Counted from the stretch's first letter, positions 876 through 44,595 are shown. The stretch is DNA of 64,000 bases from Heteronotia binoei (GCF_032191835.1 NC_083234.1:45322001-45386000), one strand, 5' to 3'. The notes: generated by a model from the letters alone, not told the origin. Numbers and translations are program-made.

Positions 876-1192
876 GGATATTTACACAAACTCCATCAGA
901 AAAAGGCGGGGGGATAATAACCTGTCGAGGCAACTCTGTGCTTCCAAGCTTTCATCCCAGAAACCCTTCAACATATTTCCTCCAAATAGTAAGGTAAATT
1001 TTAAGCAGACTATGATGACTACAAATGCTTCCTAACCAGAGCTTCAGGACACAGGGAATCTACCTCTGAATATCTAAAGGCGGAGGGGAGGGGGAACGAC
1101 TCAGTTCCTTTAGCCCAAAAGCAGCACCTGCCAAAGGAAGAGTCTCTGTTACTATTCACAGCCTGGTTCTATGAGCTCAAAGCAATACTCAC

Positions 1193-1420
1193 ACGTTTGT
1201 GTGCAGCTGGAAGTCTGCTGCCTTGTATCCCAAAGCAAAGTTATACTGTGACAATTTAGACTTGGCTGTGTCAAAAGCCATCTGGTAGCCACCAAGCCAG
1301 CCTTGGTAGCCCAACACAGCCCAGCCATAGACAGTGGGCCCAGAAAGGTCAATATCGACATTGCACCCTATGTTTAGATACTCCCGTTTGTAGGCTGTCT
1401 TCAACTTCCCACTCTTCTTC
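1193..1420 (-). CDS. VDAC3: VDAC3 coding exon (228 nt; [22 protein letters not shown]...FQLHTNV)
   Basis: Translation matches VDAC3 residues 109-184. Acceptor ctcttcag and donor gtgagt. Length equals the conserved 228-nt VDAC exon. Downstream exons were not found in 1-1192, so they are off-window. Confidence 0.97.
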
Positions 1421-1713
1421 CTGAAGAGGGAACAAATTGAATACCTTGGTTAATTGATACTCGACAACATTTCTAACCTTAAACCAAGAAAGCTTAGAAG
1501 AATTTGGCAGTGACATATCTCTGTGGACTACTTGATCTCATGAAGATAAATCTGAACACTGTGATGCAATCATTTGCAAATAAACACATGGAGGGGAAAT
1601 ACCCTCCCAATGTTCTCTACGAGCGTAAGAGTCGGCTGCAGGTGATACACTCCTCACACATCAGGGAACACACGCAGTTAAAGAATGCCATCTTACAAAG
1701 GATGGATACTTAC

Positions 1714-1766
1714 CCTGTGTTCGGTACAAATATAGTTTCAAGGTCCAGCTTCAGACCGTCAAGCAA
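1714..1766 (-). CDS. VDAC3: VDAC3 coding exon (53 nt; LLDGLKLDLETIFVPNTG)
   Basis: Acceptor tctctctctttcag, donor gtaagt. Conserved 53-nt size and phase; peptide aligns to VDAC3 LAEGLKLTLDTIFVPNTG. Confidence 0.96.
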
Positions 1767-2343: not shown

Positions 2344-2496
2344 CTTATCCTCCATGGTCACTTGTGTCCCCAGGGTGTTGTCTGTGTTCCATTTCTGGGT
2401 GAATGTAAGACCATAGTTCTTTATTTTATATTTGGTCTCTAGGCTGCCTGTAGCCTTGCCTGTGTCTGTGTTGGAAGAGCCAGCGGTGGTAAATTC
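2344..2496 (-). CDS. VDAC3: VDAC3 coding exon (153 nt; [14 protein letters not shown]...[21 protein letters not shown])
   Basis: Acceptor tttacag, donor gtaaga. Contains Q73, which is diagnostic of VDAC3 (VDAC1 and VDAC2 have Glu at the equivalent site). Confidence 0.97.
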
Positions 2497-5152
2497 CTGT
2501 AAATACACCACATTTTAATTAAAATGCGTATATCTGATCTTTTTTAATTTAAAAAATGTGATTCTGACGAATCATGCAAGCTTAACTCTGCCTCAACATG
2601 GGTTACAGTAACCAGGCACATTTAAATAACATTTATTTACATGACCCACTAGGCTCTACTGCCCTTAACAGCAGAAAGGCTTGTTCCTGGCAAGCTCCCC
2701 CTTGCATAAATGTAGCTGCCTTCACTCCTCTCATCAATGGAAAATAGCAGCTGATTTGTACCAGAGTTCCACTGGCACTTCAGAACACCCATAAAGCTGG
2801 GGGGGGGCGGTTCTACTAAGAGACAAGGTGAACACCTTAGTACTGTTTGCAAGACAGATAAACACTGCTGGCAAGCAACAATTCTTACTGAAAAGCTTGC
2901 CTACAACGTGTCTGTGTTAGTCACATAGGATAAAAGTAAATAAGGCATTTTCAGCAAAACCAGGTCTGGATTTCTGGGACCCAATTTGCTTTCCCTGCAG
3001 TCATACAGCAACTGCAGGGAAGTTTTAAAGCACTGCAGGGGGTGGTGTCAGATTGGGACAATAGCATAGGGGAAAGGAGGGGCTTCTACCTTTCCCTCCC
3101 CGCCCCTGCCATTTTCCCAAAAAGAAATGGTTCCATGTTCTCAATCCAAATGAGAACCCCTGCAGTACTTTTAAAAATTAGTTCCCTGCAAGCTTCCATG
3201 TAACTATCAGGAAAGGGAGTCTGTTCCAGCTAGCATAGGTCTGACTAATGTAAAAACATCATCTCTAGTTTGATCCTCAAGAGGGGGGGGTAGAGGGGAG
3301 AGACAATACCAGCTTTCTGTGGCTGGTTGAAGACAATTCTTTTCTTTCAAAGGCACCCAGGCAAGTAGCTATTTATAAGCCTGATAACTGTCCTACAGCT
3401 ATATTGTGAGGTCCACGTCTGTCTCAATTTATTCTTGTACAGAACTTAGTTTGTAGGTGTTAGTTGTAATGTTGCCCAACAGGTCCTACTTAAAACAAGT
3501 TCCTGACAAGTTTACTGTCCTAAAACAAGAAACCAACCCAGAAGGAACAGAAAACAGAAATAAAGTTATAGATGGGAAAATTGAATTAGCTTCAAAATGC
3601 TGCTTTTCCTTCAGCATACAAGAGTGGGAATGTCTGTGACACGCCATTTTTGTAACATTTAAAATATGAGAATTTCAAACCATGATCCGTTATTTAAAAA
3701 TAACTTCCATCTCATATTTTGGTGGCTGAAAAGACAGAAAAATAGGAGAAATTTCTTAAATCTCCTTTGCTATACACAGAAGAAAAAGAACCTTGTCATG
3801 TGATCAAAAAGGCTTCTCCGGCAGCTGAAACAAGACTTCTTCCCTCAGGGTGCGAAAAGAGTGCATCTAACATGTGTTACTATTAATTTGACAACAGTCA
3901 TGAGCAATGTAATGATAGGATCATCACTAATACCCTCTGCCTCCTGAATGCAGCTTTGCTAGTCTGAACTAGACCCCAATTAAATTACAAAAATGTATAT
4001 CCCATCTTTCCATAGATAGCACAAGGCAACTAACAACATGCTTGTTTGCTTTCTTTCAAGCATATCACAATACGTCAATATTGAACAGCACTAACCAGGC
4101 CCAGCCTGGCAAAAAATGGTCCCAAAGCAATATTAACAGCAGCCGAAACAATCAAAAGGAAGTCTTCTAGAAAAATAGTGCTTTGCAAGCACTTCTGAAG
4201 GAGAAGGGGCCATGCATGTGGCTTTGGAAAGAGATCCCACCTGGCGGGGCAATAAGAAAAACATTCTAATTTCCAGAGGGAGCCAGATGAATGAGGCTAA
4301 ACACAAGGGACACTCATTGGTGAACTTGGGGCAGATCTAAGAAAATTCCGCTTCTGACATTTCAGTTCACCACACGAAGGCAACACAGAGATGATACTCA
4401 GTAAATCACACATGTCACAATTCAAAGCTTTGGCAACAACTAACAGAGATGAAAGGGGAAAGGCAAAAGTAGTATCTCAGGCTTCAGCCTTGGCACAAAT
4501 AATAAGCTAACTAGAAAAAGGGCTCAGTAGTGCCTGGAGCAAGCAATAAACCAGTCCCAAGCTCAGCAGTGAAACTACACAGATTGGATCATTTGCAAAA
4601 ATGTATCTGATACAACAATTCAGCCCAATTTAGAAGGCAGAGAAGACTCCCTTAAATGCCCACACTAAAACCATCCACACGGCTCTCTGTACTTTGGACC
4701 TTTGTATTTCACCCACATATTTTCAAGCTGCTCAGCTAAAAGCTAAATGAGTTAAACCCCAAAACTTGGGATTCTGACCTGCTTTGTTTACCAAAGATGC
4801 GGATGAAGGGGCCTGCCAGAAGGCATGTACAAACTCCTAAAACCTCCCTAACTTGCCTTACTCCTAGAGAACTTGTTTTTAATCTAGAGAAAGCTTTGGA
4901 ATAAATAATATTGTGGTATGAGACTGGCCAGAGATGTAACCTTCTAATTTGACTACACCCCTATCCCCAGTACTTTGGCAGCCAATTCCAGTACCAATGC
5001 TGCAGCACAACCAAATTATGCTCAACTGCAGTACTTCATGCCTAATTACCGGTCCCACTGCTCAATCAGGCATGGCGGTGGGCCATTATGCAAGTATATG
5101 AACACTAAGGAAAAACATACAAGGAACACAAAAGCAAACACTATATTCTTAC

Positions 5153-5155
5153 CAG
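5153..5155 (-). CDS. VDAC3: Putative alternative 3-nt microexon (CTG, Leu) of VDAC3
   Basis: Minus strand reads TACTAAC branch point (5204-5210), tract ttttctcccttttcc, TGC, then gtttattcag|CTG|gtaaga. It lies in the same intron as the mammalian 3-nt ATG exon. Confidence 0.75.
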
Positions 5156-5616
5156 CTGAATAAACATCAAGCCCCAGTGTTGCATGGAAAAGGGAGAAAA
5201 CATGTTAGTAATTAACACCTTTAATCCATCAGTAAGGGATATTCATTCATATGTTACCATTTCCACTTGCAAAGCCAGATCCTTTCCCTTGTCAGTAGAA
5301 CTCTGTTTTGTTTTAAATAGCCATGTCTCTCCTACTCTACTATCTCAAACATGGCAGTCAAGAGGACCACCCACTGACAATCAGCTTCACGTTTCACATA
5401 AAACTAGTCTATAGGATGCTAAGTTATTCAAGGACTGAGTCTTAACACACAGTCAGTAGTATACTGAGGCTACCTGTTTAGTCATCAAATTTCTGAAAGA
5501 TGGAAAAATTATGGAAGTCAATGATGCCCATGGGTCACTTCAGTGCTATCAAGTTAGGACTTATATGGCACCAGCTCTCTCTTCTCACAGCAATGTCAAC
5601 ATGTATTGTTACTTAC

Positions 5617-5666
5617 CACTCCAGTGGAAGACTTGGTCTTCAAGTCTAATTTGACCATTCCGAACC
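5617..5666 (-). CDS. VDAC3: VDAC3 coding exon (50 nt; GFGMVKLDLKTKSSTGV)
   Basis: Acceptor atttcag, donor gtaagt; conserved 50-nt size. Confidence 0.97.
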
Positions 5667-6261: not shown

Positions 6262-6328
6262 CATATCCTTTGTTGAATACATCCCTGGCAGCTTTCCCCA
6301 GGTCACAGTAAGGTGGTGGGATAGCCAT
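6262..6328 (-). CDS. VDAC3: VDAC3 first coding exon (67 nt coding; [22 protein letters not shown]). The exon starts at 6333 with 5 nt of UTR.
   Basis: ctgtctttttcag|ACCCC ATG G..., donor gtatgt; canonical VDAC N-terminal helix. Confidence 0.96.
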
Positions 6329-7084
6329 GGGGTCTGAAAAAGACAGCAGAGATTTAGAAGTAACTATTCATTCAAAAACATGAATGTAGACAGTTCACAA
6401 ATGGAATGGCAATCAACTTACAACCACCTTAGATGTAATGCATAATGAAGAATAAAAAACCTGTATTTAGAGTTCTTCCTTCCAGGAAGAACAGTATTAG
6501 GGGGGAAAGCAACGTAACCCAAAATACACTGGGTGGAAGGTGACTTCATTAGTGGAAAGGGACTTCAGCAATATTTGTTCTAAGGGACAATCTGTTATAC
6601 CAGAACACTACACACATCTAAAGCTAGTGTACAGTTCCAAGAATAACAGATTTCCTCCTTTGTGACAATAACTACTCCCTCCATCAACTGTAAATACTTT
6701 TGATCCCAATTCTCTTGGGTTGGAGTTTCCAGGCCTCTGGCAGCTGAATATACTAAAGGAACGAGAATGTAAGAACAGCCAGCTGGATCAGATCAATAAT
6801 CCATTTAATTCAGTACACTGTTCCATTAAGTGGCCAACCAGAAGCCTATAAACTGAGCACGAAGGCCATGGGTGCTGCCTTTCCTGCAGATCTGGTATTT
6901 AGAGATCTACTGCTTCAGAACAGAGAAGCTCCATTTGGGAGGAGCCAGGGCTCAGCAGAAGACCATCTGTTTGGCATACAGAAGGTCTCAGGTCCAATTC
7001 CTGTCATATCTCCAATTAAGAGGCTTCCACCTTTGACCCTTGCCAGCCTTTGCCAATCTGAGTAGACAATAATATCTACCTAAT

Positions 7085-8064: not shown

Positions 8065-8375
8065 ATTTACCTTTACCATCTGAACTTCTGTAAGAATACA
8101 ATACCTGGGGCTCTAGAAGTAGTAGGAGAACAGCTGAACATGGTTGCAGACTTCTTATATGACAACTATGCTCCTAAATCATTTACTTCTCAAATGTGAA
8201 CCTACAGAAGGGCTCTTCTCTAGCTCTTATATAGACCTGTCAAATACACGGGGAAAATGCATGCAACATTAGAGATAAATACCATGTTACTTGTGTTGGA
8301 AACTATACCAGAAAAGGCTAATTTTCTATGACTATATGACTACAGTATCATATCAACTTTAATTTTTAAATATAA

Positions 8376-14215: not shown

Positions 14216-14949
14216 AAGAGAACATAAGAACATAAGAGAAGCCATGTTGGATCAGGCCAACGGCCCATCCAGTCCAACACTGTGTCACACAGTGGCAAAA
14301 AAATTTATATATACACACACACTGTGGCTAATAGCCACTGATGGACCTGTGCTCCATATTTTTATCTAAACCCCTCTTGAAGGTGGCTATACTTGTGGCC
14401 GCCACCACCTCTTGTGGCAGTGAATTCCACATGTTAATCACCCTTTGGGTGAAGAAGTACTTCCTTTTATCCGTTTTAACCTGTCTGCTCAGCAATTTCA
14501 TCGAATGCCCACGAGTTCTTGTATTGTGAGAAAGGGAGAAAAGTACTTCTTTCTCTACTTTCTCCATCCCATGCATTATCTTGTAAACCTCTATCATGTC
14601 ACCCCGCAGTCCACGTTTCTCCAAGCTAAAGAGCCCCAAGCGTTTCTTCATAGGGAAAGTGCTCCAGCCCTTTAATCATTCTAGTTGCCCTTCTCTGGAC
14701 TTTCTCCAATGCTATAATATCCTTTTTGAGGTGCGGCGACCAGAACTGCACACAGTACTCCAAATGAGACCGCACCATTGATTTATACAGGGGCATTATG
14801 ATACTGGCTGATTTGTTTTCAATTCCCTTCCTAATAATTCCCAGCATGGCATTGGCCTTTTTTATTGCAAACGCACACTGTCTTGACATTTTCAGTGAGT
14901 TATCTACCACGACCCCAAGATCTCTCTCTTGGTCAGTCTCTGCCAGTTC
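14216..14949 (-). mobile_element. CR1 LINE 3' fragment (ORF2 C-terminus plus 3'UTR) with 8-bp TSD AGGTGCAT
   Basis: ORFs contain HLEYCVQFWSPHLKKDI and RTRGHSMKL. Tail is (ttcttatg)n. AGGTGCAT occurs at 14208-14215 and 14950-14957. Confidence 0.95.
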
Positions 14950-21209: not shown

Positions 21210-21245
21210 AACAAGCTAGCTTCTCTGTACAACACCAGCCAAGTT
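21210..21245 (-). promoter_or_regulatory. MAT2A 3'UTR distal METTL16 hairpin (...GCUGGUGUUGUACAGAGAAGCUAGC...)
   Basis: Nonamer at 21221-21229; GCUGGU/GCUAGC stem. Confidence 0.93.
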
Positions 21246-21321
21246 AGCCCTCCCAAGGTCAGCCACCTTAGCACTTGCCCTCCCCTGTTTTACACAAGCC
21301 AGACCCCCTGTAGGTTGTGAC

Positions 21322-21348
21322 CCAAGGCTTTTCTGTAGGACACCTTGG
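21322..21348 (-). promoter_or_regulatory. MAT2A 3'UTR METTL16 hairpin, UACAGAAAA variant (CCAAGGUGUCCUACAGAAAAGCCUUGG)
   Basis: Nonamer variant at 21329-21337; CCAAGG/CCUUGG stem. Confidence 0.93.
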
Positions 21349-21418
21349 CCTAGCAGGGAATACTGGAAACTCAAGGAATTTGTGGTGTCAAAAAGAAAGT
21401 TTAAAAGCTGCCATTTGA

Positions 21419-21449
21419 GACAAGGGCTTCTCTGTACTCACACCCTGTC
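21419..21449 (-). promoter_or_regulatory. MAT2A 3'UTR METTL16 hairpin (GACAGGGUGUGAGUACAGAGAAGCCCUUGUC)
   Basis: Nonamer at 21428-21436 with a long stem. Confidence 0.95.
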
Positions 21450-21533
21450 CCAAACACAATAAATAAGCAATTATAAAAAAAACTTCAAGTATGTAGGGTT
21501 TCTCCCCGCTTCCTTTCCAAATGCACTTGTGTT

Positions 21534-21576
21534 CTGAAGAAAGCTGGTTTCTCTGTAGCTACACCACTAACTTCAG
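21534..21576 (-). promoter_or_regulatory. MAT2A 3'UTR METTL16 hairpin (CUGAAG...GGUGUAGCUACAGAGAAACC...CUUCAG)
   Basis: Nonamer at 21549-21557; GGU/ACC upper stem and CUGAAG/CUUCAG lower stem. Confidence 0.95.
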
Positions 21577-21703
21577 AATGCAATTTGGACCTGATTTGAA
21601 AACTTAAACCCTGGGAGTTTTGTGCAACATGGATTCCTTGGCTTTTCTGAAGAAAAATAATTCCAGGTGCCAAAGTATGCAGCCTACAGACCTTGGATAC
21701 ATC

Positions 21704-21733
21704 CCTGTGATTTCTCTGTAATACATCACGAGG
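21704..21733 (-). promoter_or_regulatory. MAT2A 3'UTR METTL16 hairpin (CCUCGUGAUGUAUUACAGAGAAAUCACAGG)
   Basis: Nonamer at 21712-21720, closed by a GUGAU/AUCAC stem. Confidence 0.9.
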
Positions 21734-22400
21734 TTGGCCAAGTGCCTGTTCTGATAAAAGTTGGTGAGGTTTGGCTAGTGCTAAAACCATGCATAGGATC
21801 TCTTTTAAAACCTTATTACGTACATCCTCCAAGAAGACAGAGTAGGGAAATGATTAAAATATGGTGCTGACTTAAGAGCATAATACCATGGGTTGTCAAA
21901 CCAGATCTGCCTCTGTATAAAAACCACACCATACTGGAGCTCCAGATGGAACTTGTGCTGCATGCAAGGCTATCTGGTAGGAAGATGGCTCACATGAGAA
22001 CTACTTAGCTGGAGGAAAGTGGGCTTTACATTCTCAGTGGAGCCAAGTCATTGCATCATACTGGTCTATATATTTGAACAGAGACTATGTGGAACCACAG
22101 ACTGTGCATGTTACAGTGGAAGTTTCTTTTTCACTGTTTTAAGGAAAGGAGTCCTGTTAGGTTTTGGGAGAACAAAAATATTAGACTGAAGCACTGTTGA
22201 TTACAACCTGTTCCTCTCTACATTATATTGACAACTCCTATGTTCAGCTGGCTCTACTTGTATGTCAAGAAAGAGGGAAAAGCACAGTGCAATTTGTGGT
22301 CCCCATAGGAATTAATATGCCTGGCAATGGACAGTGTGCACCAAGTTAAGAGCAAAGAAGGACAGGACCAGTTTAGGGAAGAGAGCTCTTTCCCACAGAG

Positions 22401-22432
22401 CCTGAAAGTTTCTCTGTAATTACACCAACAGG
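22401..22432 (-). promoter_or_regulatory. MAT2A 3'UTR METTL16 hairpin 1 (CCUGUUGGUGUAAUUACAGAGAAACUUUCAGG)
   Basis: UACAGAGAA at 22410-22418 in a stem-loop ~25 nt after the stop codon; resembles Rfam MAT2A_A. Confidence 0.95.
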
Positions 22433-22456
22433 TCTGGGGAAAGAAGCTCGACATAT

Positions 22457-22559
22457 TCAGTATTTAAGTTTTTTTGGTACTTCCCATGGGAAGCTGTCCC
22501 TACCAAAGTGGCCATAGGCTGCAGTCTTCTGATAAATAGGCTTCTTCAGATCCAGATCC
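22457..22559 (-). CDS. MAT2A: MAT2A exon 9 coding part (103 nt; [33 protein letters not shown])
   Basis: MAT2A-type C-terminus ending PKKLKY; TGA at 22457-22459; acceptor tattccag. Confidence 0.98.
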
Positions 22560-23498
22560 CTGGAATATACAAGTCCGTAACTCAATACAAGGCATTCACC
22601 AAACAAAGCAAAAAGCAGCTACCCCTGAAGGATCAACTTGTATGCGGGATGCTCAATGATGCAGGCCCCAAACAGATCAATGGCTGCCTTGTACAACTTG
22701 CAGTAACCCATTTGCTCCCATTTTGGGAAATGCAGGCAACAGCACAAAGTATGTCCTAAAGCACTAAGCCTCTGGGCTCAATTGGCATTGCATAGTACTT
22801 ACCAGCCTTTGAGAGTTGCTACATCCAACTGCAAATCACCATATGGTTCTCCAGTGGGGTTGACACTATTTGAATAACCAGCTTTTTCTAATCAGACCTA
22901 TCCACTTCCAGAGCACATTCTTAAGGACATAGGCAGCAACACAACAATGTTTGTAGAGCTACTGCAGTGGAGTCACCCCCATGGGGGTGCATTTAATAAC
23001 TGACACCAAGGCTATAGAGTCTTGAGCATCAGTCAATCTAACACTACCTTAAAGATCAGTATTTATCCAAAGAACAGCCTTACTACAGAAACTGGCTTAG
23101 CCTTAAGGCAATCACTACTTATATGAAGCCCTTACAGACTGTTTCCTGGTCAGTTGCACCACCTTGTTTTCATCATGTTTTTGAAATAAACACTGAACAG
23201 AGATCCCTCTGCAAGTAGAGCCCTGGATTCCCTGTAGTGTCCAGGTGATCTAACCTCAGATGCAGCTTGCAGCCACTTCCTTTATCATTAGACCAGCAGG
23301 CTGAATTCCTCATGAACTGCTTCTTTTTGCCCATTTACAGTAGATGGGGGAGTGTCACATAATGGGAGCAATATGAAAACGTTGTACATTCAAGGCAGTT
23401 GACCACAGGCTGGGTCTTGTACATTTGCAGTCTAGTCCCATCCTTATTACCTTGTTTGTATTTATCTGTGCATGCTTATTCTGACCGTGTTTTTTTAC

Positions 23499-23632
23499 CT
23501 GACAATGACCCCTGGGCGGAGGTCAAAGTTCTTCTTCACAATTTCTAGCAGCTCATGTTCACTCTTTTGAGAAGTGCCATAATGGAAAATAGAGACTGAT
23601 AACGGGTCGGCCACACCAATAGCATAGGAAAC
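23499..23632 (-). CDS. MAT2A: MAT2A exon 8 (134 nt; [45 protein letters not shown])
   Basis: Acceptor gctttcag, donor gtaaaa; size and phase as in mammalian MAT2A. Confidence 0.98.
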
Positions 23633-23814
23633 CTGAAAGCAAAATTAACATAAACCACAAGTATTAAAGTATGCTGTAACGTCCGACATCCTGTAGGACC
23701 ACTGGTTTCTATCCCTCCAGACATGTCTCTGCCTGCATTTGACTCTTGAGCTACCATATAACCTAGGTTAGTTCCTAAACTAACTTTTAAAAATGGTTAC
23801 TAATGTTTACTACG

Positions 23815-24240
23815 TAACTAACACTACTTATGCTAGAGGAGAGGCTCTTTTTCAGCCCTGGCCCCGACCTGGTGGAATCACCTCCCGGTGGAGGTTCGGG
23901 CCCTCCAGGATTTGTTACCATTCCGGAGGGCCTGTAAGACAGAGCTGTTCCATCAGGCCTATGGCTGAGGCAGACGGGGATCCTATCATTTAAACTGGGC
24001 CTCCCTGCACTGATTGCACTGTACTGATTCCTTGAAACCAATATAGCCGGAATTTGAGCACCTGGGTTGGGACAAGTAAGCCTAATCAATCTGTTAATAC
24101 CATCTTTGCTGCCCCACCTAATGTGAGCTGTGGCTTAATTGTCTTATTTTAAACTGTTTTAATTGTTTTATTGTGTTGGAAGCTGCCCTGAGCTCACTAT
24201 GGGAAAGGGTGGCCTATAAATCTATGGAAATAAATAACAT
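23815..24240 (+). mobile_element. L2 LINE 3' fragment in MAT2A intron 7
   Basis: gaggctctttttcagccctggccccgacctggtggaatcacctccc... ending with aagctgccctgag...ataaat...aaataaataa. Confidence 0.75.
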
Positions 24241-24273
24241 AAAAGATCACTATTTGTGTGTAAGTCTGATGCT

Positions 24274-24528
24274 GAGGCCCCCTGGCGCAGAGTGGTAAAG
24301 CAGCAATACTGTGATCTGAACTCTCTGCTCACGACCAGAGATCTATCCCAACGAAAGCTGGTTCAGGTAGCCGGCCCAAGGTTGACTCAGCTGGGGGGAA
24401 AGTGTAAACGACTGGGGACGGCAATGGCAAACCACCCTGTAAAAAGTCTGCCATGAAAATGTTGTGAAAGAAACGTCACCCCAGAGTCAGAAACGACTGG
24501 TGCTTGCACAGGGGACCTTTCCTTTCCT
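24274..24528 (+). mobile_element. Sauria SINE with internal deletion, MAT2A intron 7
   Basis: Homologous to 16106-16398 but lacks the central ccttccatcc...ccagctt segment. Confidence 0.85.
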
Positions 24529-24841
24529 GATATTGAGACCTACCAAGTGCCATATATCTACCATTCTGAAAATTCTTCCAGACCACATTACCAACTTATA
24601 CTTAATCACTTAAAGCCACTGTGCCTTGTTTAGCCATCTACCTAACCACCTTTGTCCCAAACAATTAGCTTGTATTCTGCAGTTTTTCTGATTGGACAAT
24701 TGTCAATATAAGGGTGCCTGACGGTTCCATCTCCAGAAACCAGTACTGTAAGCTAACCGCAACTTAACTGTGTTATCATTCTCCTCTTCCCCATTCCCGC
24801 CCCCCCAATCTTTCAGCACAGAAAAAGCAGGGTGACTATAC

Positions 24842-25024
24842 CTGTACAAGTACTCTCCGACACAGACCAGACATTACAAGGGATTTTGCTACCCAGCGAG
24901 CAGCGTAAGAAGCTGAACGGTCGACCTTTGTGTAGTCTTTACCAGAGAAAGCACCACCTCCATGAGCTCCCCAGCCACCATAAGTGTCAACAATTATCTT
25001 CCGGCCAGTCAAACCAGCATCACC
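24842..25024 (-). CDS. MAT2A: MAT2A exon 7 (183 nt; [37 protein letters not shown]...)
   Basis: Contains the AdoMet synthetase GGGAFSGKD signature; acceptor ttgcag, donor gtatag. Confidence 0.98.
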
Positions 25025-25335
25025 CTGCAATTAACAATACTCAATTAAATCATTTAGCCTTCTTTTAAAGTCCAGATGGACACAGCTGCCACCTTCACAA
25101 GACAAAACTGTTGAAGAAAGGGCAGTAAAGAACAGTTATCTTTCACACATACACCATGACTGACATTTTACATTATCAAGGCAATCTGTCCAATTCCACT
25201 TAAATTAATTTTCATATACATAAATAGAACTAAGCTACTGATAACAGCAATTAGGCTATCATCTGCAGCCTCTGAAAAAATTACATTTGTGTTGAACAGG
25301 CAACAGACAAAAAGCGAAAAAACTTTCCCTCATAC

Positions 25336-25554
25336 CTGGGGTCCACCAATTACAAAACGGCCACTAGGCTGCAAGTGATAAACTGTGCTATCATCCAGGT
25401 ACTTTGCAGGCACAACAGCTTTGACCACTTTCTCTTTCAGGGCATCTCGCATTTCATCCAGACAAATTTTATCATCATGTTGAACAGAGATAACAATTGT
25501 ATGGACTCTAATGGGGATGACAGCACCTCGATCCTGCCTGTACAGCACAGTCAC
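25336..25554 (-). CDS. MAT2A: MAT2A exon 6 (219 nt; [12 protein letters not shown]...[12 protein letters not shown])
   Basis: Translation; acceptor ttttcag, donor gtatga; conserved size. Confidence 0.98.
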
Positions 25555-25794
25555 CTGAAAACAAAACCAAGATGAAAAAATAGTATTTTATATGTTCTCC
25601 ATACCTTCAGATTCTGGCAAACTGTTACAACTAAGCAGCTAACTACCTGGCCTCTTCTAACAAAGAAACATTCTATGCATTTACCTATGTGAAGCAGCCC
25701 AATGGAGTTCACCTGCTGCTTTGAAGCATTTACTTGCATAGGCTAGCTTTCATCCACATTTCTCTCACTAGAGTTACACCAACAAGCCATTTAC

Positions 25795-25938
25795 CTGAGT
25801 TTTTGAATCTGGTCGCAGCCAGGGCAAAGTACCATTACGACGGAGTTCTGCCAGTTTAGCATTCAGCTTGTGTGCTATGATAAGTGTCAAGGGCATGCAC
25901 TCTTCAGTCTCATCAGTAGCGTAGCCAAACATCAAGCC
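25795..25938 (-). CDS. MAT2A: MAT2A exon 5 (144 nt; [18 protein letters not shown]...LRPDSKTQ)
   Basis: Translation; acceptor gttacag, donor gtaaat. Confidence 0.98.
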
Positions 25939-26023
25939 CTGTAACAAACAGAGATTTGGAACACCAGTCTCCAAGACAGCCTTAAGAATGCTATCATGTT
26001 CTGTGTAGTTTGTGAACACCAAC

Positions 26024-26136
26024 CTGATCTCCAGCACCAATGTCTTCTTCATTTCTGTCAAGATGAACTCCCTGAGCTATATCAGGGGACTGCTGCTCCA
26101 GAGCAACCAATACATTGCACGTCTTGTAGTCAAAAC
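26024..26136 (-). CDS. MAT2A: MAT2A exon 4 (113 nt; [38 protein letters not shown])
   Basis: GAGDQG signature; the gating loop HLDRNEED is MAT2A-type; acceptor cctag, donor gttggt. Confidence 0.98.
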
Positions 26137-43429: not shown

Positions 43430-44595
43430 ACATAAGAACATAAGAGAAGCCATGTTGGATCAGGCCAATGGCCCATCCAGTCCAACAGTCTGTATCACAC
43501 AGTGAACCTCATCTGCCATGTTGACAGGGTGCCACTCACCCAGCCTCAACAGATCCCTTTGGAGTTCCTCACAATCCTCTCTGGTTCTCACCACCCTGAA
43601 CAATTTAGTGTCATCTGCAAACTTGGCCACTTCACTGCTCACTCCCAACTCCAAATCATTTATGAACAAGTTAAAGAGCATGGGACCCAGTGCTGAGCAC
43701 TGTGGCACCGCACTGCTTACTGTACTCCACTGCAAAGACTGCCCATTTATACTCACTCTCTGCTTCCTATTAATTAGCCAGTTTTTGATCCACAAGAGGA
43801 CCTGTCCTTTTACTCCATGACTCTCGAGCTTACTAAGGAGCCTTTGATGAGGAACTTTATCAAAAGCTTTCTGGAAGTCAAGGTAAACAACATCTATTAG
43901 GTCCCTTTTGTCCACATGCTTGTTCACCCCCTCAAAGAACTGTAACAGGTTAGTGAGGCAAGATCTTCCCTTACAGAACCCATGCTGAGTCTTCCTCAAT
44001 AACTTGTGTTCATCAGTGTGCCTACCCATTCTGTCTTTGATAATGGCTTCTACCAACTTTCCTGGTATTGAAGTCAGACTGGCTGGCCTGTAATTTCCCA
44101 GATCTCCTCTGGAACCCTTTTTAAAGATGGGGGTGACATTTGCTACCTTCCAGTCCTCAGGAACGGAGGCAGATTTCAATGAAAGATTACATATTTTTGT
44201 CAGGAGATCCACAAGTTCAACTTTGAGTTCTTTCAGAATTCTTGGATGTATGCTATCCGGACCTGGCGACTTATTAGTTTTTAATTCGTCAATCAGTTGT
44301 AGGACCTCCTCTCTTGTCCCCTCAATCTTTCAACACCCCTTCCAAAATTAGTGGTTCTGGAGTGGGCAAACACTTCTCGTCTTCCACAGTGAAGATGGAG
44401 GCAAAAAATGCATTCAGCTTCTCAGCCATTTCCCTATCCTCCTTCAGTAATCCTTTGACCCCTTGGTCATCCAAGGGCCCCACTGCCTCCCTGGCTGTTT
44501 TCCTGCTTCTAATATATTTGAAGAAATTTTTATTGTTGGTCTTTATGTTTTTTGCAATATGCTCATAGTCCCTTTTTGCCCGCCTGATCTGCTTA
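43430..44595 (-). mobile_element. CR1 LINE fragment (RT domain) with internal deletions
   Basis: ORF 43460-44212 has NYRPASLTSIPGK, YLDFQKAFDKVPH and FADDTKL. The 3' tail is shared with the 14216 copy. A deletion joins the RT region to the 3'UTR near 43505. Confidence 0.95.

What the first reader, a model, noticed from the sequence alone, without database searches (positions are those of the whole stretch)
5148..5210. VDAC3 3-nt microexon recoded from ATG (Met) to CTG (Leu)
Seen: in the intron between the 50-nt and 153-nt exons the sense strand reads TACTAAC (perfect branch point), a pyrimidine tract, TGC, then ...ttattcag|CTG|gtaaga, a fully equipped 3-nt exon. Known: mammalian VDAC3 has a tissue-specific 3-nt ATG exon in this intron, included in brain, heart and muscle, that inserts Met after V39. 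Inference: this is the orthologous microexon, giving ...STGV-L-EFTT. A non-ATG codon would show that selection acts on inserting one hydrophobic residue, not on creating an internal start codon. Gene predictors will usually miss it.
Basis: partly seen in the sequence, partly recalled or inferred. Interest (0 to 1): 0.78.

Follow-up and report, generated by a model that had tools for sequence, protein, structure and literature searches.

The report
Gecko VDAC3 3-nt microexon encodes leucine
This is the gecko copy of a known, deeply conserved 3-letter alternative exon of the mitochondrial channel gene VDAC3; here, as in the other lizards, birds, monotremes and one marsupial checked, it reads CTG (Leu) instead of ATG (Met), but no RNA from this species yet shows it being used.

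Summary
On the minus strand, 461 nt into the 3,120-nt intron between the 50-nt and 153-nt VDAC3 exons, the sequence reads tttattcag|CTG|gtaaga (window 5153-5155). TACTAAC, a pyrimidine tract and a TGC lie upstream.

The motif alone is weak evidence: about 0.5 such sites are expected per shuffled intron. Conservation carries the case. The block is the best or only part of this intron that aligns to the same intron of another gecko, an iguanian lizard, a bird, platypus and Xenopus. In Xenopus the 3-nt exon is ATG; in all five amniote genomes it is CTG.

Public protein models with GV-L-EF exist for several lizards, many birds, both monotremes and a possum. Eutherians, an opossum, amphibians and fishes have GV-M-EF. 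So the Leu codon is old and widespread, not peculiar to this genome. At least three Met/Leu switches are implied, and their direction is unresolved.

The window's exons match Heteronotia binoei VDAC3 exactly. Neither RefSeq isoform of that species carries the exon. The only RNA available (contigs from three runs, tissue unknown) skips it, so inclusion here is inferred, not shown.

The argument against an internal start codon was already made experimentally (Decker and Craigen 2000). This is an unannotated member of a known microexon family and of moderate interest.

The parts
5153..5155 (-). Candidate 3-nt alternative exon CTG. If included it inserts Leu between V39 and E40 of VDAC3.
   Evidence: Sequence. 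Orthologous CTG with AG/GT flanks is present in Sphaerodactylus L009:3674-3676, Sceloporus L010:3707-3709, bird L005:3356-3358 and platypus L011:12310-12312. Xenopus L004:9645-9647 has ATG (alignment A2).
5147..5152 (-). 5' splice site gtaaga of the microexon.
   Evidence: Best donor score of the 13 AG-NNN-GT sites in the intron. GTAAG is invariant in all six species.
5156..5210 (-). Upstream splicing signals: acceptor cag (5156-5158), TGC at 5182-5184, pyrimidine tract at about 5186-5202, TACTAAC branch-point-like heptamer at 5204-5210, and a 63-nt AG-free zone.
   Evidence: TTTTCCATGC is conserved from gecko to Xenopus. Branch-point use is inferred, not tested.
5104..5237 (-). Conserved intronic island centred on the microexon.
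   Evidence: Intron-versus-intron blastn. It is the best HSP against Sceloporus (intron 380-492) and the only HSP against the bird (399-513, E 6.5e-13), platypus (417-524, E 4e-5) and Xenopus (415-443, E 0.002). Between the two geckos it is the most conserved 60-nt window of the intron: 95% against a mean of 68%.
5617..5666 (-). VDAC3 50-nt exon (…FGMVKLDLKTKSSTGV).
   Evidence: RNA contig joints. The translation is an exact substring of H. binoei VDAC3.
2344..2496 (-). VDAC3 153-nt exon (EFTTAGSS…MEDK).
   Evidence: Pfam Porin_3 at E 9e-12, RNA joints and an exact match to P0219 residues 40-90.
6262..6333 (-). VDAC3 exon carrying the main start codon ([22 protein letters not shown]).
1713..1766 (-). 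VDAC3 54-nt exon (LLDGLKLDLETIFVPNTG).
1192..1419 (-). VDAC3 228-nt exon. The rest of the gene lies beyond the start of the window.
   Evidence: Porin_3 at E 2.5e-17, PDB VDAC hits.

Best explanation
The CTG at window 5153-5155 (minus strand) is the Heteronotia (gecko) orthologue of the ancient vertebrate VDAC3 3-nt alternative exon. That exon is known as the 'ATG exon' in mouse, rat and human, and as VastDB DreEX0084235/HsaEX0070291 in zebrafish and human. When included, it adds one hydrophobic residue, here Leu, between V39 and E40. This is at the turn between beta-strands 1 and 2 of the channel barrel, and the rest of the protein is unchanged. Shown: the exon architecture; the orthology; the CTG state in five amniote genomes; and long-term conservation of the exon with its splice signals after the A-to-C change. 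Inferred: that it is still spliced in, in a tissue-restricted way, in this gecko; that recognition uses the distal branch point, pyrimidine tract and UGC layout typical of regulated microexons; and that the selected property is a one-residue hydrophobic insertion, not a start codon.
For: Host gene: Porin_3 exons. All five exon translations are exact substrings of H. binoei VDAC3 XP_060106441.1.

Position and signals.

Orthology: Xenopus laevis has ...ctccttttccatgcggcactgg...ctatag|ATG|gtaagg in the same intron. Unbiased intron-versus-intron blastn finds this block as the best or only match in Sceloporus, bird, platypus and Xenopus. In alignment A2, AG-NTG-GTAAG-A and the TGC are invariant. 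It is the most conserved 60-nt window between the two gecko introns.

Leu isoforms: models with GV-L-EF are annotated in Sphaerodactylus, Sceloporus, Varanus, Pogona, chicken, duck, quail, pigeon, many passerines, platypus, echidna and Trichosurus. I confirmed genomic CTG in three of those species.

Met isoforms: models with GV-M-EF are found in eutherians, Gracilinanus, frogs, lungfish, coelacanth, ray-finned fishes and sharks.

Literature: the 3-nt exon is reported in mouse, rat and human (PMC8374620). It is neural and srrm3/4-dependent in zebrafish, with dPSI 87.6 and -41.0 (PMC12626424 supplementary file 1).

Structure: an AlphaFold model of the Sceloporus +Leu isoform (pLDDT 72) places L40 as the first residue of strand 2, after the 37-39 turn.
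Against: No RNA shows inclusion in this species. Contigs from three metatranscriptomic runs (two studies, tissue unknown) join 5617 directly to 2496 with no letters between. Contigs drop minor isoforms, so this is not proof of absence.

Neither RefSeq isoform of H. binoei has the residue.

No Logan transcript-derived protein with the Leu insert was found in any species.

RefSeq Leu models may be partly protein-guided rather than RNA-based. Pelecanus carries both an L and an M model (P0204, P0478).

The structural placement rests on one medium-confidence model. The minus-Leu model was poor, with pLDDT 46.6.
Confidence: 0.8

Rival explanations
1. It is an orthologous relic. The block descends from the microexon but is no longer spliced into mRNA in this gecko, or in sauropsids generally. 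The annotated Leu isoforms would then be artefacts of homology-guided annotation.
For: Only the skipped junction is seen in the available RNA. H. binoei RefSeq lacks it. No Logan transcript protein has the Leu insert. Pelecanus has both L and M models, which shows that 3-nt exons can be placed without species RNA.
Against: A dead exon should decay. Instead cag|CTG|gtaagaat is essentially invariant across gecko, iguanian, bird and platypus, while the rest of the intron is unalignable between those lineages. It is also the most conserved 60 nt between the two gecko introns. The change to CTG therefore predates a long period of purifying selection on the exon and its splice sites.
Confidence: 0.1
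2. It is a conserved intronic regulatory element, for example a decoy or recursive-type splice site or a splicing-factor platform. Its AG/GT pair would matter for processing of the intron, but its 3 nt would not be meant to code.
For: The conserved island extends about 60 nt upstream of the exon and includes a TGC and a pyrimidine tract. Inclusion is unproven here.
Against: In zebrafish and mammals the same element is a bona fide included exon, translated as an extra Met. The second and third exon bases (TG) are invariant and the first varies only A/C, so the codon stays hydrophobic. The intron is only 3.1 kb, which is short for recursive splicing.
Confidence: 0.06
3. It is a chance AG-NNN-GT motif with no relation to the mammalian exon.
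For: AG-NNN-GTRAG is expected about 0.5 times in a shuffled intron of this size.
Against: Positional and sequence homology extends to Xenopus (ATG) and four other amniotes. The stricter motif has P of about 0.026.
Confidence: 0.01

Closest known systems
Mammalian VDAC3 'single ATG exon' (Sampson et al. 1998, pmid 9804816; Decker and Craigen 2000, pmid 10833333)
   Same: Same gene and same intron, between the 50-nt and 153-nt coding exons. Same 3-nt length and same insertion point after V39. It has AG/GT flanks and a hydrophobic inserted residue.
   Different: The codon is CTG (Leu), not ATG (Met), so it cannot serve as a canonical internal start. Tissue pattern and inclusion are untested in this species.
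Zebrafish vdac3 neural microexon DreEX0084235 (PMC12626424)
   Same: It belongs to the same orthology group, linked to HsaEX0070291 in that paper's table. It is a 3-nt exon in the same intron.
   Different: The zebrafish exon is strongly neural (dPSI 87.6) and srrm3/4-dependent (dPSI -41.0). The human orthologue is not (1.6 and 5.6). Regulation in reptiles is unknown. Other ray-finned fishes sampled encode Met; I did not read the zebrafish codon itself.
RefSeq Leu-insert VDAC3 isoforms of other sauropsids and monotremes (e.g. Sphaerodactylus townsendi XP_048368039.1, Sceloporus undulatus XP_042329133.1, Varanus komodoensis XP_044293264.1, Gallus gallus XP_015157906, Ornithorhynchus XP_028921559.1)
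   Same: They have an identical cag|CTG|gtaagaat core and the same conserved upstream block. I checked the genomes of Sphaerodactylus, Sceloporus and platypus.
   Different: Those are annotated, whereas the H. binoei models (XP_060106440.1, XP_060106441.1) omit the exon.

Membership tests
VDAC3 3-nt microexon orthology group (HsaEX0070291 / DreEX0084235) | The host gene is the VDAC3 orthologue. | tested here: met
   Porin_3. Five exon translations are exact substrings of H. binoei VDAC3. VDAC3-named proteins dominate the top hits of the search that returned P0219.
VDAC3 3-nt microexon orthology group (HsaEX0070291 / DreEX0084235) | It lies in the intron between the 50-nt exon (…SxGV) and the 153-nt exon (EF…), is 3 nt long, and has AG and GT flanks. 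| tested here: met
VDAC3 3-nt microexon orthology group (HsaEX0070291 / DreEX0084235) | The flanks are homologous in sequence to the microexon of other vertebrates. | tested here: met
   Xenopus ATG block, blastn of whole introns, alignment A2 and the gecko-gecko identity profile.
VDAC3 3-nt microexon orthology group (HsaEX0070291 / DreEX0084235) | The exon sequence is ATG (Met), as in the original description. | tested here: not met
   CTG here and in four other amniote genomes. This trait describes the first-characterised species and does not define the orthology group.
VDAC3 3-nt microexon orthology group (HsaEX0070291 / DreEX0084235) | It is alternatively included in mature mRNA (brain, heart and muscle in mammals; neural in zebrafish). 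| tested here: inconclusive
   Only skipping contigs were found in three metatranscriptomic runs of unknown tissue. No brain, heart or muscle runs were served.
SRRM3/SRRM4 (eMIC)-dependent neural microexons | A UGC motif lies between an upstream pyrimidine tract and the acceptor, with a distal branch point and a strong 5' splice site. The layout is recalled from the general literature. | tested here: met
   TGC at -29, pyrimidine tract at -47 to -31, TACTAAC at -55, and GTAAGA donor. The TGC is invariant in A2.
SRRM3/SRRM4 (eMIC)-dependent neural microexons | Inclusion falls when SRRM3/4 are lost, and inclusion is neural-specific. | not testable with these tools
   Zebrafish dPSI_eMIC is -40.96 but human is 5.56, so dependence is not uniform even among orthologues.
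Eukaryotic porin (Pfam PF01459) | Profile match above the gathering score. | tested here: met
   45.4 and 63.6 bits against a cut-off of 28.4. PDB VDAC1/2 hits down to E 2e-33.

The most novel reading that the evidence does not exclude
The so-called 'ATG exon' of VDAC3 is CTG (Leu) in every sauropsid, monotreme and the one diprotodont marsupial sampled. Met and Leu have swapped at least three times in amniotes, while the second and third bases (TG) and the splice signals stayed fixed. On this reading the selected function is a one-residue hydrophobic spacer at the beta1-beta2 turn, and an AUG is dispensable. I found no paper in the held library that states this.
Probability: 0.6. Interest if true: 0.45.

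Novelty: new member of a known kind. Interest (0 to 1): 0.4.

Why it matters
It adds a missing isoform to the annotation of this gecko's VDAC3. More generally, it shows that one of the smallest known conserved exons has kept its position, splice signals and hydrophobic character for over 400 million years while its single codon switched between Met and Leu. That is comparative support for the experimental conclusion that the exon works as a residue insertion and not as an internal start. It also gives a natural Met/Leu pair for testing what one extra residue at the beta1-beta2 turn does to the least understood VDAC isoform. It is also a caution for annotation. Several database 'isoforms' with Q or V at this site look like artefacts of forcing a 284-residue template onto the genome.

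Tried and rejected
1. RNA test. The look-up of sequencing runs offered only four small metatranscriptomic runs held as contigs. Read laying showed the skipped junction in three of them and nothing on the microexon.

2. Big HMMER search with the 76-aa exon. The hits were mostly fragments. It was useful only for giving a near-full-length query (P0032).

3. Word search with the 51-aa exon. It gave exon-ORF fragments on genomic contigs. L001-L003 and L007-L008 had too little upstream sequence. The weak TTCCATGC match in L007 was judged not homologous.

4. Locus look-ups that failed. P0298, P0316 and P0253 are not on record, because only the longest product of a gene is indexed. P0184 (sheep hybrid) turned out to be an intronless retrocopy. 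As a result, no eutherian or marsupial genomic intron was compared. Their states come from protein models and the literature.

5. Eutherian reversion from Leu to Met. I considered this, then dropped it when the opossum Gracilinanus proved to have Met (P0464). All scenarios then need at least 3 changes.

6. V (Pygocentrus P0265) and Q (Macaca P0190, Anser P0496) inserts. I did not count these as real states. V equals the gta of the upstream donor and Q the cag of the downstream acceptor, so they are probably annotation fudges. This is an inference and was not checked in DNA.

7. AlphaFold of the minus-Leu isoform was too poor (pLDDT 46.6) to compare with the plus-Leu model.

8. No repeat or transposon copy of the block exists elsewhere in the window.

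9. No contig taken for human was fetched or compared.

Full report
**What is there.**

The gene lies on the minus strand. Read on that strand, the 50-nt exon (…ACTGGAGTG|gtaagt, window 5617-5666) is followed 461 nt later by ...attactaacatgttttctcccttttccatgcaacactggggcttgatgtttattcag|CTG|gtaagaatatag. In + coordinates:
- The CTG occupies 5153-5155 and the gtaaga donor occupies 5152-5147.
- The acceptor AG is at 5156-5157 and a TGC is at 5182-5184 (-29).
- A pyrimidine tract lies at about 5186-5202 and TACTAAC lies at 5204-5210 (-55).
- No AG occurs in the 63 nt before the acceptor.

The next exon (GAATTTACC…, 153 nt) is at 2344-2496.

**The host gene.**

The 153-nt and 228-nt exon translations hit Pfam Porin_3 and solved VDAC1/VDAC2 structures. 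Transcript contigs from three public RNA runs confirm five exons: 6262-6333, 5617-5666, 2344-2496, 1713-1766 and 1192-1419 (boundaries refined). Each exon translation is an exact substring of Heteronotia binoei VDAC3 (XP_060106441.1, residues 1-184). The window is therefore from that gecko or a very close relative. The 3' part of the gene lies beyond the start of the window.

**Is the motif more than chance?**

By itself, barely. The 3,120-nt intron has 13 AG-NNN-GT sites. This one has the best donor score and the longest AG-free zone, and none of the 13 is ATG. However, AG-NNN-GTRAG is expected 0.52 times per Markov-shuffled intron (P of at least one = 0.40). The stricter YAG-NTG-GTRAG is expected 0.026 times. 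The case rests on comparison with other species.

**Orthology.**

I searched exon by exon, by reference, and did not join exons.
- The 51-aa exon found exon-ORF fragments on genomic contigs of other vertebrates.
- The 76-aa exon gave a route to named full-length VDAC3 proteins.

From these I fetched the loci of Xenopus laevis (L004), an accipitrid-like bird (L005/L006), the gecko Sphaerodactylus townsendi (L009), Sceloporus undulatus (L010) and platypus (L011).

In Xenopus the same intron is only 456 nt. It contains ...ttgtttgctccttttccatgcggcactggaaaccctatag|ATG|gtaagg. The upstream CTCCTTTTCCATGC…CACTGG string matches the gecko block.

A scan of each intron for AG-NNN-GTRAG gave the following sites:

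| Species | Locus | Sequence at the site | Distance into the intron |
|---|---|---|---|
| Heteronotia (window) | window | cag\|CTG\|gtaagaat | +461 |
| Sphaerodactylus | L009 | cag\|CTG\|gtaagaat | +465 |
| Sceloporus | L010 | cag\|CTG\|gtaagaat | +715 |
| Bird | L005 | cag\|CTG\|gtaagaat | +1129 |
| Platypus | L011 | cag\|CTG\|gtaagaat | +2925 |

Each site lies within the same conserved block (A2), which in the four sauropsids carries the TTCCATGCAA motif.

An unbiased blastn of the whole gecko intron against each other intron found this island as follows:
- Against Sceloporus it is the best HSP.
- Against the bird it is the only HSP (E 6.5e-13).
- Against platypus it is the only HSP (E 4e-5).
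- Against Xenopus it is the only HSP (E 0.002).

Between the two gecko introns, which are 68% identical overall, the most conserved 60-nt window is the one holding the microexon (95%). In the six-species alignment A2, the AG, the TG of the exon, GTAAG and the TGC are invariant. The first exon base is C in the five amniotes and A in Xenopus.

**How widespread is the Leu codon?**

I scanned the fetched proteins for the junction …K(T/S)KS..GV[x]EF….

An inserted Leu is found in:
- Lizards: Sceloporus, Varanus, Pogona and the gecko Sphaerodactylus.
- Many birds: chicken, quail, duck, swan, goose, pigeon, pelican, dipper, thrush, tit, manakins, finch, plover, fulmar and nightjar.
- Both monotremes.
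- The possum Trichosurus.

An inserted Met is found in:
- Eutherians: mouse, cat, horse, bats, hippo, lemur and others.
- The opossum Gracilinanus.
- The frogs Rana and Leptobrachium.
- Lungfish and coelacanth.
- Polypterus, paddlefish and teleosts.
- Sharks and a chimaera.

CTG is therefore an old state shared by sauropsids, monotremes and part of the marsupials. It is not a gecko novelty. Because the two marsupials differ, every scenario needs at least three Met/Leu changes among amniotes, and the direction cannot be resolved. I had considered a Leu-to-Met reversion in eutherians and dropped it on this evidence. Turtles and crocodilians were not sampled.

Single cases of V (piranha) and Q (macaque, goose) at this site coincide with the gta of the upstream donor and the cag of the downstream acceptor. 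I take them for annotation artefacts. This is an inference.

**Is it used in this species?**

This is not shown. The only runs offered were four small metatranscriptomic libraries held as contigs. In three of them (two studies) the transcript contig joins 5617 directly to 2496 with no letters between. That is the skipped isoform. Contigs drop minor isoforms and the tissues are unknown. In zebrafish it is strongly neural (dPSI 87.6) and falls by 41 points without srrm3/4, whereas the human orthologue shows neither bias (PMC12626424 supplementary file 1).

Both H. binoei RefSeq isoforms lack the residue. I found no Logan transcript-derived protein with the Leu insert in any species, while the mouse Met isoform and several skip isoforms do occur there. 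The pelican has both an L and an M model, so RefSeq can place 3-nt exons by homology. The Leu models are therefore not by themselves proof of RNA.

The positive argument for function is evolutionary. cag|CTG|gtaagaat and its upstream signals have stayed essentially unchanged across gecko, iguanian, bird and platypus, in an intron that is otherwise unalignable between those lineages. That implies purifying selection after the change to CTG.

**Likely mechanism.**

This part is inferred. The layout is a distal branch-point-like TACTAAC, then a pyrimidine tract, then a conserved UGC, then a non-pyrimidine spacer, then the AG, together with a near-consensus donor. From general knowledge, this is the arrangement described for regulated, often SRRM3/4-dependent, microexons.

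The A-to-C change sits at exon position +1, which is also donor position -3. C and A are both common there, so it should be close to neutral for splicing. The TG is part of the donor context and also fixes an NTG hydrophobic codon.

At the protein level, the residue is added between V39 and E40. An AlphaFold model of the Sceloporus +Leu isoform (pLDDT 72) has strand 1 at 28-36, a turn at 37-39 and L40 as the first residue of strand 2. The minus-Leu model was too poor to compare. What the extra residue does to gating or partner binding is unknown.

**Relation to what is known.**

- The exon was described in 1998 (Sampson et al.).
- Human proteomics detected the Met-insert isoform (PMC3424414).

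The Leu codon is independent comparative support for it. Searches of the held literature found no paper that mentions a Leu or CTG version. That library is incomplete.

**Verdict.**

Orthology is well supported. The 'recoding' is real, but it is ancient, widespread and already present in database models of relatives. Inclusion in this gecko is probable but unproven. I class it as an unannotated member of a known microexon family, with a modestly interesting evolutionary twist.

Relatives' database proteins were used instead.

Noticed in passing
window 21210-26061 (minus strand): A MAT2A-like gene lies immediately upstream of VDAC3 on the same strand. An ORF at 25774-26061 reads …[47 protein letters not shown], and earlier notes of the scan place its 3'UTR at 21210-22432. 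In Xenopus, birds and Sphaerodactylus the neighbour seen beside VDAC3 is IKBKB. From memory, MAT2A and VDAC3 are on different chromosomes in human.
   Followed up: no
window 8105-8141 (minus strand): An alternative upstream coding exon, ATGTTCAGC…GCCCCAG|gtat, encodes MFSCSPTTSRAP. It gives the N-terminally extended RefSeq isoform X1 (P0297). It is supported by a loose end of an RNA contig in run X3. A second, non-coding upstream exon is also implied by another loose end.
   Followed up: partly
window 1399-1421 and 2344-2396: One 128-nt contig of run X4 joins the 153-nt and 228-nt exons with 52 other letters in place of the 54-nt exon, and has 5 mismatches in the 153-nt exon. It may come from a paralogue, another organism or a chimera.
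   Followed up: no
window 14328-14910 and 43460-44212 (minus strand): These are ORFs resembling reverse transcriptase of non-LTR retrotransposons (CR1/LINE-like), judged by eye from the translations.
   Followed up: no
proteins P0336 and P0464: The two marsupials differ at the microexon. Trichosurus vulpecula is annotated with Leu and Gracilinanus agilis with Met. The codon has therefore switched within or around marsupials.
   Followed up: partly
proteins P0204 / P0478 (Pelecanus crispus); P0190, P0496, P0265: The pelican has both an L and an M one-residue-insert model. The macaque and goose models have Q and a piranha model has V at the same site. Q and V match the acceptor cag and the donor gta, which suggests template-forced annotation artefacts.
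   Followed up: no
L012 (sheep hybrid, CM043055.1): The 'hypothetical protein' P0184, 283 aa and VDAC3-like, is encoded by a single 852-nt uninterrupted ORF. It is probably a processed retrocopy and not the parent gene.
   Followed up: no
PMC12626424 supplementary file 1: The zebrafish vdac3 microexon is strongly neural and eMIC-dependent, but its human orthologue is listed as NO_REG (dPSI neural 1.61, eMIC 5.56). Regulation of this exon has therefore diverged among vertebrates.
   Followed up: no
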